Part shown: one piece after another, positions 5,970 to 27,003 of the stretch
Position numbering within the stretch: position 1 is the first letter of the stretch
How the letters are laid out: every line of letters starts with the position of its first letter
Source: Lytechinus pictus
Lineage: Eukaryota
Assembly (NCBI RefSeq): GCF_037042905.1
Contig: NC_087248.1
Span: forward strand, 10,292,001-10,356,000
Reading direction: 5' to 3'
DNA length: 64,000 nucleotides
Notes under the pieces: generated by a model
Databases searched by the model: none
The model's input: only the letters and a program-made list of their open reading frames with translations
What the model was told of the DNA's origin: nothing
Made by a program: the position numbers and the translations under genes

Positions 5970-6577
5970 CCCTATGTCCTACTGGAATAAACCCTTTGTG
6001 TGCCACAGTGTGTTCACAGAGTGAAACACAATGTGAAATCACCTTCACACTGTTAATTTGAATTTGAGCATTTCAACACACTTTCACTCCATACACACAT
6101 CCCTACTAGACAGAACACAGTGCCCCACAGTGTGTGCCACAGTGTGAAATCACCTTCACATTGTTAAATTTGAGCATTTCAACACACCTTCACTCCGTAC
6201 ACACATCCCTACTAGACAGAACACAGTGCCCCACAGTGTGTGCCACAGTGTGAAATCACCTTCACATTGTTAAATTTGAGCATTTCAACACACCTTCACT
6301 CCGTACACACATCCCTACTAGACAGAACACAGTGCCCCACAGTGTGTGCCACAGTGTGAAATCACCTTCACACTGTTAAATTGGAGCATTTCGACAGTGT
6401 GAATCACATATTCACATACAGTCGACCATGTGAACACGCTGTGAACAAAGATTGTCGAGGTGTCCACAATGTGAAATATCTCCACACTGTTGAATTTGAG
6501 CATTGTAATAGTGTGAATAATATTTTCACATAGTCCACCTTGTGATCACACGATGTGAAACTGTTCTTTCTAGCGGG
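5970..6577. repeat. Composite repeat with an internal ~106 bp tandem array (copy 1 of family)
   Basis: Unit CACAGTGTGAAATCACCTTCACATTGTTAAATTTGAGCATTTCAACACACCTTCACTCC...CCCTACTAGACAGAACACAG repeated ~4x; unique 3' part shared with 16560-16761. Confidence 0.85.
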
Positions 6578-15802: not shown

Positions 15803-16761
15803 AGCACACCCTCACTCCATACACACATCCCGACTGGAAAAAACACAGTGTCTCGCAGTGTATGCCTTAGTATGTTCACAGTGTGGAACACATTGTAAAT
15901 TCACCTTCACATTGTTGAATTTGAGCATTTCAGCACACTTTAACTCCATACACATATCCCAACTGGACAGAACACAGTGTGGGCCACAGTATGTTCACAA
16001 TGTGGAACACAATGTGAAATCGCCTTCACATTGTTAAATTTGGGCATCCCCACATACTTTCACTCCATACACATATCCCTATTGAAGAGAACACAGTGTT
16101 CCACAGTGTGTCCACAGTGGGGTTACAGTATGTCCACAGTGTGGAACACAATGTGAAATCACCTTCACATTGTTAAATTTGAGCATCCCCACATACTTTC
16201 ACCCCATACACATATCCTTATTGAAGAGAGCACGCTGTCCAACAAGGTGTCCACAGTATGTCCACAGTGTGGAACACAATGTGAAATCACCTTCACATTG
16301 TTAAATTTCAGCACTCCAACACACCTTCACTCCATACACATATCCCTATTGAAGAGAACACGCTGTCCAACAGTGTGTCCACAATATGTTCACAGTGTGG
16401 AACACAATGTGAAATCACCTTCACATTGTTAAATTTCAGCACTCCAACACACTTTCACTCCATACACTTATCCCTATTAGACAGAACCCAGTGTCCTACA
16501 GTGTGTGACACAGTATGTTCACAGTGTGGAACACATTACGAAATCATCTTCACACTGTTAAATTTGAGCAATTCAACAGTGTGAATCACATATTCACGTA
16601 GTCGACCATGTGCACACGATGTGAACAGTCTCACTGTCGAGGTGTCCACAGTGTGAAAATATCTCCATTGTTGAATTTAGACATTTTAACAGTGTGTATA
16701 ACATTTCTACATAGTCCACCATGTAAACACACTGTGTGACACTGTGTTTTTTCGAGCAGGG
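15803..16761. repeat. Composite repeat with an internal ~120-130 bp tandem array (copy 2 of family)
   Basis: About 6 units homologous to 5970-6577; CCCGACTGGAAAAAACACAGTGTC (~15829) is inverted relative to GACACTGTGTTTTTTCGAGCAGGG (~16738-16761). Confidence 0.85.
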
Positions 16762-21774: not shown

Positions 21775-23665
21775 TGATCCAGACCGTGTTTTCAATCTTC
21801 ATGTTATAACTAATACAAATTCGCAATGCTAACTCTGTTAATACATTTAAAGTTATGCTTAAAACTCATCTTTTTAAATCTTAAATTGATCATATCATAT
21901 GTTTATTGGCCCATTGATGGTATTTCTTTATTCATGATCTGGCGAGAAAAAGTTGTAAATTGTAATATTAGTTTTGATACACTTTGTTGTGCAAAGTATT
22001 TCTATTTCTATTTCCTCTATACTTCATTTTCCTTTCTTTTAACCGCTTAGAGGCAATTTGCGAATTTGCGGTATATAAAATTGTTATTATCATTATTTAC
22101 CTTACATGATAATAATATGATGCTCGTAACTTTCCGATCTTATCATGCTTATATCGAATTTAGGACTTGCAGTTCGCCCCACCATCACTGTTTTGCTCAA
22201 TACTTTTTATAGTTTGCTTTATTAACGCTTACTATGTATATTTCCAAACTATGTTGCATATTGATCTGAGCTTTGATGATAAGGAATTCAGGATTTTGAT
22301 ATTGTTATTTTACAGTCTATTTCATTTTTCGTATTATAATTATCATTCACGTTATCATTAGTATTGTTTAAACGTATTTTCTTTAGCTTCCAAAATTAAA
22401 TCGATCGGTCAGAAAAGAAGTAGTAGGAGAAGTAGTAGTCTGCTATAATCGACAGATCACCTCTTGTTTTGTATTTCAGAATGTTATTTATCACTATGAG
22501 GTTGTTTGTTTTTATTCACGATAAAAACTACATAAATATAAAACGAAATATGCATTTTATGAACAAAAATAATATGTAACAATACCTCCACAAAGTAATG
22601 AATGTAAACAAATATAGAAAATAAATCGTATATAGAGATACACCGTTAAAGATTGCTTCCCCCTCCCCGAGGTCTCGGGAATTGCTATTACAGTTTCTAT
22701 GACAATAATAAATTAATGTAAAATAAATTAAATAGTTAGGATGTATGAACTTACGATGCAAGGTCAGATATCACCCTCATCTTGCACAGCTCCGGTTATT
22801 TCTATTTCTCTTTTTATAAGTTGAAAAGTAATCTGTTTAGTTTTTGGATGGAAAGGGGTAAATTGTACAATTTTCCAAAACGATATTGAAATGTCCGTTT
22901 ATAGTTTTTAGTGTTAGGTTTAGGCAAGATAGTTTGATTCACTTTCCTTGTAGGGTAACTCAGTGCCTCAAAATATTTTTTCTTCAAATTGGCATGAGAA
23001 ATATAAAATATTTTATAGAATAGACATTACTGTATATGGAAAATTGATGTTGCTAAAAAGTAATTCCTGTCTTAAAATATAAAGAATTTCATGCACTCTT
23101 CTGTGATCTGATACTTTGATTTTGAATATTAAAATTGTCCTTAATGTATGGTTTTGCAGTTTTTGTAAAATGCCAAGACAAGATTCAGTCGCCGATAAAA
23201 GATTCAAACTTAACTTATTAAAAAAAAAACTGATAGTCCACCAAGAAAACTGATTATCTTACAAACTTTTGTGAAAAGGTCTTATCAATTACTATTCCTT
23301 TTTAGATTAAAAACAATAGTAATCCCAACATGACCAGGGTAATTTATAGATTTAACCTGTTCAATATGGATATCCTGAATTTTTAGGTTTAATAAGTAAT
23401 CTTCGAATAAACGGTGTGCATTGCCCTATATTCCGTATAAATGTAATATGTGAAAGAATATTTTGTGACTAAATGTACTGAAAGCGTTGCTTAAGTAAAA
23501 AAGTATTCCAAATTACATGCTCTATGTTAGCCATCGCTTTTGTAATTTTGTCGTAAATATTTACTAACGCTAAGCCTTTGAAATGTTTCTTTCTAAAACC
23601 GTATTGATTTGGAATCAATAAATTACGCAATTTTAAAAAATTGTATAATCTTGTATATATACATG

Positions 23666-23698
<33 letters not shown>

Positions 23699-23828
23699 CA
23701 TTGTCATTGTCAGCTTGTCATTGTTCGAAACCCACCTTCACCCGACAAAGGAAATTATAATTGGTATAGTGTCGAAAATTTGTCTATCTGACGGTCAATC
23801 GGATCGGGGTCGCCCTAGCCACTAACCC

Positions 23829-23900
23829 GTCTCTGTGGTCTAGTGGTTAAGGCACCGGCGTTCAAAGCTGGGGGCCCGGGTTCGATTCCCGGCAGAGACA
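23829..23900 (+). tRNA. tRNA-like gene, anticodon TCA (opal-suppressor-like), copy 1
   Basis: Acceptor GTCTCTG/CAGAGAC+A73; D stem GTCT/AGGC; anticodon stem CCGGC/GCTGG with loop GT-TCA-AA; 4-nt variable loop; T arm CCGGG-TTCGATT-CCCGG; T-run terminator follows. Confidence 0.7.
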
Positions 23901-24233
23901 TTTTTTCGGCATCACCAATTTTTCCAAAGGGTAGATAGCTCTGGGGAACCTTGATTTAAGCTACGCCTACCATTGTTCTCTTCATCCATTTCTTTACAAT
24001 ATTTAAATAAAAAGAGTTGCCAAAGCTGTTGTACATGTATAACTTTACACATTTGTATACGTTCCCCCTACGTGTACTGTATCAAAGCAATAGCTTTGAT
24101 CCAGCTGAAGCATGGCGGCTTGTCATTGTTCGAAACCCACCTTCACCCGACAAAGGAAATTATAATTGGTATAGTGTCGAAAATTTGTCTATCTGACGGT
24201 CAATCGGATCAGGGTCGCCCTAGCCACTAACCC

Positions 24234-24305
24234 GTCTCTGTGGTCTAGTGGTTAAGGCACCGGCGTTCAAAGCTGGGGGCCCGGGTTCGATTCCCGGCAG
24301 AGACA
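24234..24305 (+). tRNA. tRNA-like gene, anticodon TCA, copy 2
   Basis: Identical to copy 1. Confidence 0.7.
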
Positions 24306-24640
24306 TTTTTTCGGCATCACCAATTTTTCCAAAGGGTAGATAGCTCTGGGGAACCTTGATTTATGAGCTACGCCTACCATTGTTCTCTTCATCCATTTCT
24401 TTACAATATTTAAATAAAAAGAGTTGCCAAAGCTGTTGTACATGTATAACTTTACACATTTGTATACGTTCCCCCTACGTGTACTGTATCAAAGCAATAG
24501 CTTTGATCCAGCTGAAGCATGGCGGCTTGTCATTGTTCGAAACCCACCTTCACCCGACAAAGGAAATTATAATTGGTATAGTGTCGAAAATTTGTCTATC
24601 TGACGGTCAATCGGATCGGGGTCGCCCTAGCCACTAACCC

Positions 24641-24712
24641 GTCTCTGTGGTCTAGTGGTTAAGGCACCAGCGTTCAAAGCTGGGGGCCCGGGTTCGATTC
24701 CCGGCAGAGACA
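24641..24712 (+). tRNA. tRNA-like gene, anticodon TCA, copy 3
   Basis: As copy 1 but anticodon stem CCAGC/GCTGG (G-U replaced by A-U). Confidence 0.7.
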
Positions 24713-25045
24713 TTTTTTCGGCATCACCAATTTTTCCAAAGGGTAGATAGCTCTGGGGAACCTTGATTTAAGCTACGCCTACCATTGTTCTCTTCATCCA
24801 TTTCTTTACAATATTTAAATAAAAAGAGTTGCCAAAGCTGTTGTACATTTATAACTTTACACATTTGTATACGTTCCCCCTACGTGTACTGTATCAAAGC
24901 AATAGCTTTGATCCAGCTGAAGCATGGCGGCTTGTCATTGTTCGAAACCCACCTTCACCCGACAAAGGAAATTATAATTGGTATAGTGTCGAAAATTTGT
25001 CTATCTGACGGTCAATCGGATCGGGGTCGCCCTAGCCACTAACCC

Positions 25046-25117
25046 GTCTCTGTGGTCTAGTGGTTAAGGCACCGGCGTTCAAAGCTGGGGGCCCGGGTTC
25101 GATTCCCGGCAGAGACA
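25046..25117 (+). tRNA. tRNA-like gene, anticodon TCA, copy 4
   Basis: Identical to copy 1; T-run one nt longer. Confidence 0.7.
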
Positions 25118-25451
25118 TTTTTTTCGGCATCACCAATTTTTCCAAAGGGTAGATAGCTCTGGGGAACCTTGATTTAAGCTACGCCTACCATTGTTCTCTT
25201 CATCCATTTCTTTACAATATTTAAATAAAAAGAGTTGCCAAAGCTGTTGTACATGTATAACTTTACACATTTGTATACGTTCCCCCTACGTGTACTGTAT
25301 CAAAGCAATAGCTTTGATCCAGCTGAAGCATGGCGGCTTGTCATTGTTCGAAACCCACCTTCACCCGACAAAGGAAATTATAATTGGTATAGTGTCGAAA
25401 ATTTGTCTATCTGACGGTCAATCGGATCGGGGTCGCCCTAGCCACTAACCC

Positions 25452-25523
25452 GTCTCTGTGGTCTAGTGGTTAAGGCACCGGCGTTCAAAGCTGGGGGCCC
25501 GGGTTCGATTCCCGGCAGAGACA
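25452..25523 (+). tRNA. tRNA-like gene, anticodon TCA, copy 5
   Basis: Identical to copy 1. Confidence 0.7.
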
Positions 25524-25601
25524 TTTTTTCGGCATCACCAATTTTTCCAAAGGGTAGATAGCTCTGGGGAACCTTGATTTAAGCTACGCCTACCATTGTT
25601 C

Positions 25602-25808
25602 NNNNNNNNNNNNNNNNNNNNNNNNNNNNNNNNNNNNNNNNNNNNNNNNNNNNNNNNNNNNNNNNNNNNNNNNNNNNNNNNNNNNNNNNNNNNNNNNNNN
25701 NNNNNNNNNNNNNNNNNNNNNNNNNNNNNNNNNNNNNNNNNNNNNNNNNNNNNNNNNNNNNNNNNNNNNNNNNNNNNNNNNNNNNNNNNNNNNNNNNNNN
25801 NNNNNNNN
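25602..25808. other. Assembly gap
   Basis: Run of N. Confidence 1.
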
Positions 25809-25959: not shown

Positions 25960-26198
25960 CACTGATACATCCTTTACGTAAGCGAAACACTACTAAATAC
26001 TTGTAGCCAATTAAGCTGTAAGCTGTTCTTCCAGCGGGCCCTGCATAACATGTTATGATTGACCTTTCTCCATTCTTATGCGTCGAGCGTCCGACAAAAA
26101 TAAAATCATTTTTTTAAAGTCTTTGGTATGACTCGGCCGGTAATTGAACCCAGGACCTCTCGTTCATGAGGCGGGCGCTCTACCACTGAGCCACCAAT
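25960..26198 (-). mobile_element. tRNA-derived SINE
   Basis: Minus strand GGTGGCTCAGTGGTAGAGCG ... GGGTTCAATTACCGGCCGAGTCATACCAAAGACTTTAAAA. Confidence 0.65.
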
Positions 26199-27003
26199 AC
26201 CTTTCTTTATTGTCAAAATGTTAAGCAAGATCATTACTATGTTTATTACACAGTTCGTATAACATTCACCCGGAGAAAAAAAAGCACTTCGCAGCATCCT
26301 GGTGCACATTTCGCACAAGAGTATAGACCCTTAATTAGTTTAGCAATTGCCACAAATCCCATGCAATTCTTATTCTATATGTAGCCAAATTGAATAGATG
26401 TATCGTTATTTTTACTCTTACTGATAAAATATAATTGATTTTTTTAAATATAAAGTATTGAAATAGCTTTGCGCACGATTTCTATCGAAAAATTATTTTA
26501 AAAACAATGAAGTCGAAGCCCAAGGAAATACTTCTGAAACTTAAATTCATACTTGTGCGGGATGTGCAACGCATCACCCATTGGTGAAAGAAGAAAATCC
26601 CCGAAAATGTATTTCAGAAATAGGCCGAACACGTTAAAGATGATTTGATACTGTTAATGTCAAAGATTTTGAAAGAATCGTGCGATCAATGCAAACACAT
26701 TTTCAGTCCCAGAATCAATCATACATCTTGCAGTTAATTGCAAATTAGCGATTGATCGCTGATCTGTTTCATGAAACAATAATTATTAGGAGTGTAAAGT
26801 GATTTTCTACAGTGCAAATTTATCTAGAAGGGCATATCCTATATGAAATTGCCACAGAATTTTGCGATTGATAATGCAAATATTTTCTTGCAACACCTGC
26901 AACTTGCAACACCAGTCACAAGTACCTATTGTGAAACAACCTCAGTTGCATGTGACAGCCACTTATAATTACTCGCTGTGTGTTGTTTCCTCTTTATACG
27001 CAG

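What the first reader, a model, noticed from the sequence alone, without database searches (positions are those of the whole stretch)
23925..24125. Spacer of the tRNA array looks like a structured RNA with a possible loop-loop pseudoknot
Seen downstream of each tRNA: hairpin GGTAG-A-TAGCT...AGCTA-CGC-CTACC whose loop holds GGGGAAC; hairpin GTATACGT-TCCCCCT-ACGTGTAC containing the complementary GTTCCCC; then CTG-T-ATCAAAGC-AATA-GCTTTGAT-C-CAG. Upstream of the tRNA is CGACA...TGTCG-AAA. Known: tandem few-hundred-bp repeats with Pol III boxes plus ribozymes exist (Schistosoma Sm-alpha, retrozymes). I found no canonical hammerhead core here. Inference: the unit may be a retrozyme-like or Penelope-mobilised RNA using an undescribed fold, or using the tRNA as its cleavage signal.
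Basis: inference. Interest (0 to 1): 0.7.

Follow-up and report, generated by a model that had tools for sequence, protein, structure and literature searches.

The report
tRNA-carrying Penelope-style repeat, no ribozyme
The "spacer" between the tRNA genes is the body of a short jumping element that has inserted over a thousand times into (TA)n repeats of this animal genome in the manner of Penelope-like retroelements. Its small hairpins look incidental, and its one strong fold is a long hairpin made by an old back-to-front copy of the tRNA.

Summary
The three hairpins and the GGGGAAC/GTTCCCC match are in the sequence as described. They do not exceed chance, and I found no compensatory change in 74 distinct copies.

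The perfect 8-bp hairpin 2 and the perfect loop-loop match belong only to a young minor lineage (74 exact copies). The widespread form has a 6-bp stem. No known ribozyme or hammerhead core is present.

The 405-bp unit is a mobile element. About 1,000 to 2,000 copies lie on all large contigs, always in (TA)n. They have three fixed 3' ends, variable 5' truncation, partial tandems, head-to-head inverted copies and an extra "tail" on one side. This is the insertion signature of Penelope-like elements.

New here: the 80 bases upstream of each tRNA are a decayed inverted copy of the tRNA's 3' part plus its trailer. Together with the tRNA they form a 72-bp hairpin (-88 kcal/mol, z -7.9) that is much stronger on the sense strand.

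The autonomous partner, transcription and processing remain untested.

The scan had already met this family on other DNA of the same genome. Verdict: an ordinary-to-moderately interesting retroelement variant; the pseudoknot/ribozyme reading is not supported.

The parts
23654..23698 (.). (TA)n microsatellite abutting the 5' end of the array (insertion target)
   Evidence: At 36 of 36 other array ends examined, the element runs into (TA)n.
23713..25601 (+). Array of 4.7 units of 405 bp. It starts 5'-truncated at unit position q218. Its 3' end lies under the N-run and was not examined.
23829..23900 (+). tRNA-like gene, anticodon UCA, 72 nt. Further copies at 24234-24305, 24641-24712, 25046-25117 and 25452-25523.
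   Evidence: ARAGORN. Rfam tRNA 60.9-65.3 bits against a gathering score of 29.
23901..23906 (+). T6 run directly after the tRNA (Pol III terminator-like). A second T5 lies at q19-23.
23930..23971 (+). Hairpin 1 (5+5 bp, loop with GGGGAAC), inside the 3' module q1-q109
   Evidence: -10.9 kcal/mol, matched by 74 of 200 shuffles. 2,021 anchored copies genome-wide, with only pair-breaking or wobble variants.
24005..24062 (+). Zone of the alternative 3' ends: copies elsewhere end in (TA)n at q105-115, q141, q151 or q158-162
24055..24077 (+). Hairpin 2, young A-type form (8 bp, loop TCCCCCT)
   Evidence: -8.8 kcal/mol against -2.8 for the widespread B-type form. 74 exact A-type copies. B-type dominates the 1,057 anchored copies.
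24077..24104 (+). Hairpin 3 (3+8 bp, loop AATA), the most stable and best kept of the three
   Evidence: (-12.9 kcal/mol).
24154..24233 (+). Decayed inverted copy of the tRNA's 3' part plus the first ~26 bases of its trailer.
   Evidence: Local alignment score 30 against 13.7 +/- 2.2 in 1,000 shuffles, maximum 23. Repeat pairs I4, I8 and I9.
24145..24340 (+). Long imperfect hairpin (72 bp, 7 of them G-U) formed by the inverted copy with the tRNA and its trailer. Only the anticodon arm stays a separate branch.
   Evidence: -88.4 kcal/mol, z -7.85, centroid equals MFE. Opposite strand -64.9, z -3.8. Four other copies give -84 to -92 against -59 to -71.
25602..25808 (.). N-run that cuts off the array; left untouched
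   Evidence: The row of a fetched locus that reaches into this stretch was left out of all analyses.

Best explanation
The 333-bp "spacer" plus the tRNA gene is one 405-bp unit of a non-autonomous retroelement family. It has roughly 1,000 to 2,000 copies in this 812-Mb animal genome. It is inserted the way Penelope-like elements (PLEs) insert.

Shown:
- Copies sit in (TA)n microsatellites.
- 3' ends fall at a few fixed TA-like sites, within q105-115, q141, q151 and q158-162.
- 5' ends are truncated at many positions.
- Insertions are partial tandems, often with a head-to-head inverted copy. One outer end is usually about 30-55 bp longer than the other (the "tail").

Inferred mechanism: a transcript longer than one unit, probably not made by Pol III because T6 and T5 follow the tRNA, is reverse-transcribed by a PLE enzyme supplied in trans. 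The nicked (TA)n target primes on UAUA-like sites at q100-160. Early stops and template switches then give truncated, tandem and inverted copies.

The three small hairpins and the loop-loop match are most likely incidental. The only strong fold is a 72-bp sense-strand hairpin, made because the 80 bases upstream of the tRNA are an old inverted copy of the tRNA's 3' part and trailer. This is best read as a fossil head-to-head insertion that became part of the unit. No ribozyme is present.
For: Dispersal:
- 189 or more matches at 90-100% identity on at least 20 contigs.
- Exhaustive pattern counts: 2,021 copies of the hairpin-1 module, 1,057 of the middle region, 936 of the leader/tRNA junction.

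Insertion anatomy:
- 36 of 36 3' ends merge into (TA)n or (CA)n(TA)n at q105-115, q141, q151 or q158-162.
- 18 single-orientation 5' ends lie at 18 different positions, and 11 of them abut (TA)n.
- There is a further 5' hot spot at q72 joined to (TA)n.
- In 9 of 10 head-to-head pairs, one outer end is short (q105-109) and the other long (q141-162).
- These features are the ones listed for PLEs, including the (TA)n preference of Naiads, the one-sided tail, and multicopy head-to-tail non-autonomous derivatives (PMC8557442).
- Two 5'-truncated PLE copies (RT plus C-terminal GIY-YIG) abut the same (TA)n tracts as arrays, in L026 and L047.

No ribozyme.

No covariation: 0 compensatory changes in 74 distinct rows for every proposed helix and for the MFE pairs.

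Hairpin 2 and the pseudoknot partner are perfect only in a 74-copy lineage.

Inverted duplication and long hairpin.
Against: - No autonomous PLE sharing the 3' module was found. The five GIY-YIG hits on the stretch of C1 and C2 covered by the listed hairpin-1 matches have no such match within 2 kb. A scan for the q76-90 segment without hairpin 1's 3' arm upstream of it gave only truncated or rearranged copies.
- No transcript data were available, so the RNA intermediate is inferred from anatomy alone.
- The strand asymmetry of the long hairpin (23 kcal/mol) hints that it may be kept as RNA rather than being a mere fossil. So does the fact that four of the five variants in it seen in three or more distinct copy sequences (three of them confirmed at 2-4 loci) are A-to-G changes that turn A-U into G-U.
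- Stem variants of hairpin 3 look rarer than loop variants in the 100 rows listed.
Confidence: 0.72

Rival explanations
1. The long sense-strand hairpin (inverted pseudo-tRNA paired with the tRNA and trailer) is a selected RNA structure of the element. It could be the feature the reverse transcriptase recognises, or a processing or silencing substrate. It would take the place that the hammerhead holds in PLEs and retrozymes.
For: - z -7.85, and the centroid equals the MFE.
- It is 23 kcal/mol stronger on the sense strand, with 7 G-U pairs.
- It is kept at -84 to -92 kcal/mol in four other copies, including a 94%-identical one.
- Four of five recurrent variants are pair-preserving A-to-G changes.
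Against: - All copies compared are at least 94% alike, so conservation is trivial.
- There are no double compensatory changes.
- The A-to-G excess over T-to-C is small: 7 to 1 inside the hairpin and 4 to 4 outside (counted by eye), and about 10 to 6 in 100 listed genome rows (counted by eye).
- A recent inverted duplication gives a hairpin without any selection.
Confidence: 0.15
2. The tRNA acts as a processing signal. RNase P and RNase Z would cut multi-unit transcripts at each tRNA and release unit-length RNA, possibly circularised. This would be a protein-dependent analogue of retrozyme self-cleavage.
For: - The cloverleaf is intact and scores 60.9-65.3 bits.
- The tandem layout is like that of retrozymes (PMC7229834).
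- The spacer's 5' end pairs with sequence near its 3' end (q3-25 with q255-283), which would bring the cut ends close.
Against: - Cutting at both tRNA ends removes the tRNA from the template, yet every copy carries it.
- 5' ends of insertions do not cluster at the tRNA boundaries.
- In read-through RNA the tRNA is predicted to be locked in the long hairpin.
- RNase P/Z products (5'-phosphate, 3'-OH) are not the ends that RtcB joins in retrozymes (my knowledge).
Confidence: 0.08
3. One reading: the spacer RNA folds into hairpins 1-3 with a loop-loop pseudoknot and is a new self-cleaving or otherwise catalytic fold.
For: - The motifs exist.
- The changes from the widespread B-type form to the window's A-type form both lengthen the hairpin-2 stem and perfect the 7-nt complementarity.
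Against: - Local stabilities and 7-mer complementarity are at chance level.
- The MFE and centroid folds do not use hairpins 1 or 3.
- There is no covariation.
- Most of the family spread with a 6-bp, -2.8 kcal/mol hairpin 2 and an imperfect partner.
- Divergent copies carry an uncompensated C-A mismatch in hairpin 1.
- There is no known ribozyme signature.
Confidence: 0.03
4. A DNA-level mechanism (Helitron-like rolling circle, or reintegration of extrachromosomal circles by TA microhomology) spreads the tandem repeat, with no RNA intermediate.
For: - Both junction types use TA microhomology.
- The copies are tandem, and no poly(A) is present.
Against: - The ends are strongly asymmetric: a few fixed 3' ends against many 5' ends.
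- Head-to-head copies with a one-sided tail are a PLE hallmark.
- No Helitron-style termini were evident at the junctions read.
Confidence: 0.05

Closest known systems
Non-autonomous derivatives of Penelope-like elements (e.g. MRC1 of Chlamys; Naiad-type insertions), Craig et al. 2021, PMC8557442
   Same: 5' truncation, partial tandems (pseudo-LTR), multicopy head-to-tail insertions, an adjacent inverted 5'-truncated copy, an extension on one side only, (TA)n target preference, and no canonical hammerhead.
   Different: This element carries a complete tRNA-like gene with its own terminator and an inverted pseudo-copy of it. The tail is about 30-55 bp rather than 30-40. No autonomous partner with a shared 3' end was found. 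The two PLE copies seen beside arrays have a C-terminal endonuclease, not the N-terminal one of Naiads.
Metazoan non-LTR retrozymes (Cervera & de la Pena 2020, PMC7229834; Li et al. 2026 preprint 10.64898/2026.07.22.740005)
   Same: Short (170-400 bp) non-coding units in tandem, dispersed, thought to depend on PLEs.
   Different: The defining type I hammerhead is absent. Circular RNA was not tested. A tRNA gene is present instead.
Schistosoma Sm-alpha repeats
   Same: A tandem unit of a few hundred bp with Pol III-type boxes, linked to PLEs.
   Different: Sm-alpha has an active hammerhead and a degenerate tRNA-like head (my knowledge). Here the cloverleaf is complete and no hammerhead exists.
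TRIMp3 elements (Cassandra, Helenus, Ajax; Kojima 2024, PMC10886601)
   Same: Non-autonomous retroelements, not SINEs, that carry a small-RNA gene (5S or tRNA-like) in their repeated ends. Predicted suppressor-type tRNAs arise from such copies.
   Different: Those are LTR elements with a PBS/PPT and 4-5 bp target duplications. This family has PLE-type junctions in (TA)n.
tRNA-derived SINEs
   Same: A tRNA-derived module with intact A and B boxes, a short non-coding body and thousands of copies.
   Different: T6 directly follows the tRNA. Insertions do not start at the tRNA 5' end. Units are tandem and inverted, and the tail is (TA)n target sequence rather than a LINE-type tail.

Membership tests
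PLE-type (Penelope-like) insertion / PLE-dependent non-autonomous element | Frequent 5' truncation with fixed 3' ends | tested here: met
   36 3' ends fall in a few classes. 18 single-orientation 5' ends lie at 18 positions.
PLE-type (Penelope-like) insertion / PLE-dependent non-autonomous element | Partial tandems (pseudo-LTR) and an adjacent inverted 5'-truncated copy | tested here: met
   Typical insertion is a partial unit, then one or more full units, then a partial unit. At least 10 head-to-head pairs.
PLE-type (Penelope-like) insertion / PLE-dependent non-autonomous element | Short extension ("tail") at one end only | tested here: met
   In 9 of 10 inverted pairs one outer end is at q105-109 and the other at q141-162. 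The length is about 30-55 bp, against the published 30-40.
PLE-type (Penelope-like) insertion / PLE-dependent non-autonomous element | Microsatellite, here (TA)n, target bias | tested here: met
PLE-type (Penelope-like) insertion / PLE-dependent non-autonomous element | An autonomous PLE (RT plus GIY-YIG) in the genome that shares the 3' end | tested here: inconclusive
   PLEs are present (59 GIY-YIG matches), and two copies share (TA)n tracts with arrays. No shared 3' sequence was found.
Non-LTR retrozyme | Type I or minimal hammerhead ribozyme in each unit | tested here: not met
   No Rfam hammerhead at E up to 10. No CUGANGA or UUGANAA on either strand of a dimer.
Non-LTR retrozyme | Unit-length circular RNA | not testable with these tools
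   No RNA data were on hand.
tRNA-derived SINE | Pol III transcript running from the tRNA head through the body to the tail | tested here: not met
   T6 at q1-6 and T5 at q19-23 follow the tRNA. 5' ends are not at the tRNA start.
   0 compensatory changes. The inner pairs of hairpin 2 and the perfect GTTCCCC are absent from the widespread form. There is an uncompensated mismatch in hairpin 1 of divergent copies. Power is low because copies are at least 90% alike.
Host tRNA gene cluster | Few loci, spacers unrelated to mobile DNA | tested here: not met
   936 to 2,021 anchored copies on all large contigs, with junctions in (TA)n.

The most novel reading that the evidence does not exclude
This is a PLE-dependent, retrozyme-like element that has replaced the hammerhead with a tRNA module. 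The sense-strand 72-bp hairpin (pseudo-tRNA paired with tRNA) would be a selected RNA switch. In read-through template RNA it hides the tRNA from RNase P/Z. It may also serve as the recognition or processing structure, with A-to-G footprints of dsRNA editing. Pol III transcripts of the same DNA would give a free UGA-reading tRNA.
Probability: 0.12. Interest if true: 0.7.

Novelty: new variant of a known kind. Interest (0 to 1): 0.38.

Why it matters
For the finding as written, it matters little. The proposed new ribozyme or pseudoknot is not supported, and the hairpins should not be annotated as a structured RNA.

For transposon biology the family is a useful case:
- It is a very young, abundant element with PLE-type insertions. 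It lacks a hammerhead and carries an intact tRNA gene plus a fossil of its own head-to-head insertion.
- It offers hundreds of nearly identical junctions for working out how PLE enzymes prime on (TA)n and how they make tandem, inverted and "tailed" copies. That mechanism is still unknown (PMC8557442).
- It is also a warning for tRNA annotation. About a thousand or more "opal suppressor" tRNA genes in this genome are repeat modules.

Tried and rejected
- **Rfam.** Permissive thresholds over 3.6 kb covering several tandem units gave only tRNA, plus chance or tRNA-shaped sub-threshold hits.
- **Hammerhead cores.** I searched for the canonical core and the U3-A8 variant on both strands of a dimer and found none.
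- **Coding potential.** The longest ATG ORF in a dimer is 53 aa.
- **Cross-species or transcript copies via pseudo-ORFs.** Six exact look-ups found nothing. One word-based protein search found no candidate. This says nothing about absence, since such ORFs are unlikely to have been called.
- **Autonomous partner.**
  - tblastx of the L026 PLE fragment against all held DNA found only L047.
  - The visible start of the L047 PLE 3' UTR is CT-rich and shows no match to the unit.
- **Origin of the middle region.** A test of whether q111-253 derives from the tRNA or the 3' module was not significant.
- **412-bp subfamily.** A pattern with the CTGAAGCATGG anchor gave no match, because that subfamily appears to carry a variant there (CTGAGGCATGG in the related copy L025:2712-3063).
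  - I did not use the count of structure pairs, to avoid typing a 427-character structure string. The same counts were made in scripts.
  - The constraint fold with an enforced cloverleaf did not apply the constraint, so I discarded it.
  - I did not read or use the letters under the window's N-run. One fetched locus reaches into it, and that row was excluded.

Full report
**1. What is at the coordinates**

Window 23713-25601 holds 4.7 head-to-tail copies of a 405-bp unit at 99% identity. The array is cut off by an N-run at 25602-25808, which I left alone.

Each unit has these parts:
- a 72-nt tRNA-like gene with anticodon UCA (ARAGORN; Rfam tRNA 60.9-65.3 bits against a threshold of 29);
- a T6 run directly after it;
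- a 333-bp "spacer".

I number the unit from the first base after tRNA copy 1 (q1 = window 23901).

- hairpin 1 at 23930-23971, with GGGGAAC in its loop;
- hairpin 2 at 24055-24077, with GTTCCCC half in the stem and half in the loop;
- hairpin 3 at 24077-24104;
- CGACA/TGTCG-AAA at 24148-24182.

**2. Are the hairpins more than chance?**

Against 200 dinucleotide shuffles of the spacer:
- the best 48-nt local fold (hairpins 2+3, -17.6 kcal/mol) is matched by 13 shuffles;
- hairpin 1 (-10.9) is matched by 74;
- the sum of the three best local folds is matched by 17.

The spacer holds five 7-mer self-complementarities, where 4.1 are expected. The GGGGAAC/GTTCCCC match is therefore unremarkable.

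The MFE and centroid folds of the spacer keep hairpin 2 but use neither hairpin 1 nor hairpin 3.

Rfam at E up to 10 over several tandem units finds no ribozyme. Neither the hammerhead core CUGANGA nor its U3-A8 variant occurs on either strand of a dimer.

**3. The unit is a dispersed mobile element**

The window's genome is 812 Mb. Earlier notes of this scan call it a sea urchin; I did not test that.

It holds at least 189 matches to the unit at 90-100% identity on at least 20 contigs. Exhaustive pattern scans give these counts:
- 2,021 copies of the hairpin-1 module;
- 1,057 copies of the middle region;
- 936 copies of the leader/tRNA junction.

The excess of 3' parts is what 5' truncation predicts.

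I read the junctions at about 30 loci:
- All 36 3' ends run into (TA)n, some into (CA)n(TA)n. They lie at q105-115, q141, q151 or q158-162, each a TA-like microhomology site.
- 18 single-orientation 5' ends lie at 18 different positions, and 11 of them abut (TA)n. A later scan showed a 5' hot spot at q72 joined to (TA)n.
- A typical insertion is a partial unit, then one or more full units, then a partial unit.
- At least ten loci are head-to-head pairs. In nine of the ten, one outer end is short (q105-109) and the other long (q141-162).
- The window's own array starts at q218, 14 bp after a (TA)22 tract.

**4. Comparison with what is known**

Craig et al. 2021 (PMC8557442) describe PLE insertions as follows:
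- strongly 5'-truncated;
- organised in partial tandems (pseudo-LTRs);
- often with an inverted 5'-truncated copy next to the 5' end;
- with a 30-40-bp tail at one end only;
- for Naiads, preferentially in (TA)n and without a canonical hammerhead.

They also describe non-autonomous derivatives that make multicopy head-to-tail insertions.

All of these features that I could test are met here. The exception is that I could not find an autonomous partner sharing the 3' end:
- PLEs are present (59 GIY-YIG matches).
- Neither shows sequence in common with the unit.

The element is not a retrozyme by definition, because it has no hammerhead. It is not a SINE either: T6 and T5 follow the tRNA, and insertions do not start at the tRNA.

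In the held literature I found no description of a PLE-type element carrying a tRNA gene. The nearest analogues are:
- Sm-alpha;
- the TRIMp3 LTR elements with small-RNA genes in their repeats (PMC10886601).

**5.

In 74 distinct rows from about 27 loci there is no compensatory change in hairpins 1-3, in the CGACA/TGTCG stem, in the proposed loop-loop helix, or in any MFE pair. Variants break pairs or make wobbles. Power is low because the copies are at least 90% alike.

The genome-wide scans add more.
- The window's form of hairpin 2 (A-type: 8 bp, -8.8 kcal/mol, perfect GTTCCCC) has only 74 exact copies.
- The form seen at most loci, and in the more divergent copies, reads GTATACTTTCTCCCATACGTGTAC (B-type). 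It has a 6-bp stem, -2.8 kcal/mol and an imperfect partner.
- An intermediate C-type form also exists.

So most of the family spread without the features the model rests on. The young lineage did gain both a longer stem and perfect complementarity, which is at most a weak hint.

- Divergent copies of hairpin 1 carry an uncompensated C-A mismatch (GGGCAG... with CTACC).
- Hairpin 3 is the best kept. In the 100 rows listed, loop variants outnumber stem variants per base (counted by eye). I treat this as a lead only.

**6. What the strong structure signal really is**

The spacer's MFE z-score of -3.2 is the same on both strands. It comes from pairing of q3-25 with q255-283.

Following this up, the 80 bases upstream of each tRNA (24154-24233) align to the reverse complement of the tRNA's 3' part plus the first ~26 bases of its trailer. 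The score is 30, against 13.7 +/- 2.2 and a maximum of 23 in 1,000 shuffles (repeat pairs I4, I8 and I9). The middle region q111-253 shows no such relation.

The unit therefore contains a decayed head-to-head junction of the same kind that present-day insertions make.

As RNA, window 24145-24340 folds into one long imperfect hairpin:
- 72 bp, 7 of them G-U;
- -88.4 kcal/mol, z -7.85;
- centroid equal to the MFE, which makes up 8.5% of the ensemble.

In this fold only the anticodon arm survives as a branch, so the cloverleaf is not formed.

The opposite strand reaches only -64.9 kcal/mol (z -3.8). Four other copies show the same asymmetry.

Four of the five variants in this hairpin seen in three or more distinct copy sequences are A-to-G changes that turn A-U into G-U. 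Three of these sites are confirmed at 2-4 separate loci. A-to-G exceeds T-to-C by 7 to 1 inside the hairpin and 4 to 4 outside it (by eye). In 100 listed genome rows the ratio is about 10 to 6 (by eye). None of this is significant.

These observations fit either mild selection for the sense-strand fold or editing of a double-stranded template. They are my main unexplained observation.

**7. Most likely mechanism**

Shown: the insertion anatomy, the absence of known ribozymes, the non-conservation of the proposed fold, and the inverted duplication.

Inferred:
- The template is a transcript longer than one unit. Pol III starting at the tRNA would stop at T6.
- A PLE enzyme supplied in trans nicks (TA)n.
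- The target end primes on UAUA-like sites at q100-160.
- Early stops and template switches give the truncated, tandem, inverted and tailed copies.

The tRNA gene can still be transcribed on its own by Pol III. Whether that product does anything is outside this finding.

**8. Verdict**

The Penelope-type reading is supported. The ribozyme/pseudoknot reading is not.

The scan has already reported this family from other stretches of the same genome, and my analysis agrees with those notes. It adds four things:
- the subfamily history of hairpin 2;
- the statistics for the hairpins;
- the one-sided tail regularity;
- the inverted pseudo-tRNA hairpin.

Noticed in passing
L026:1-1290 (- strand) and L047:3530-5206 (+ strand): Two different 5'-truncated Penelope-like copies (RT motifs plus C-terminal GIY-YIG; about 44% identity to each other over the best tblastx segment). 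Each starts right at a (TA)n tract that also holds the 3' end of a tRNA-repeat array, in the same orientation as the array.
   Followed up: partly
window 24145-24340 and the same region in L025, L041, L046, L050: The long hairpin is 20-29 kcal/mol more stable on the tRNA-sense strand. Recurrent variants in it are mostly A-to-G (A-U to G-U). This could be a footprint of dsRNA editing of the template or of selection; the numbers are too small to tell.
   Followed up: partly
genome-wide, unit position q72: At least 20 loci have copies 5'-truncated exactly at q72-75 (ATTG) and joined to (TA)n. The 5' junctions therefore also use TA microhomology.
   Followed up: partly
3' flanks in L023, L025, L034, L035, L039, L041, L042, L045: Several other repeat families recur directly beyond the (TA)n tracts, for example one beginning ...GGTTTAGTAAATGCCGTA and one beginning ...AGTAAGTCCCCCC. 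(TA)n microsatellites therefore seem to be shared landing sites for several elements in this genome.
   Followed up: no
window 26129-26200 (- strand): A weak tRNA-Met-like sequence (Rfam 33.8 bits, just over threshold) about 300 bp beyond the N-run. It may be a tRNA-derived repeat head rather than a gene.
   Followed up: no
window 6027-6559 and 15869-16578: Two related tandem arrays with periods of 106-128 bp, rich in CACAGTGTG-type motifs. They are unrelated to the tRNA repeat.
   Followed up: no
window 24267-24274 vs 24092-24099 and 24021-24031: The heptamer CAAAGCT, or its complement, occurs in the tRNA anticodon arm, at q121-128 and in both arms of hairpin 3. Tested as a possible shared origin, it was not significant.
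   Followed up: yes
window 25602-25808: A locus fetched automatically from the genome (L003) appears to carry letters where the window shows N. I did not read them or use them.
   Followed up: no
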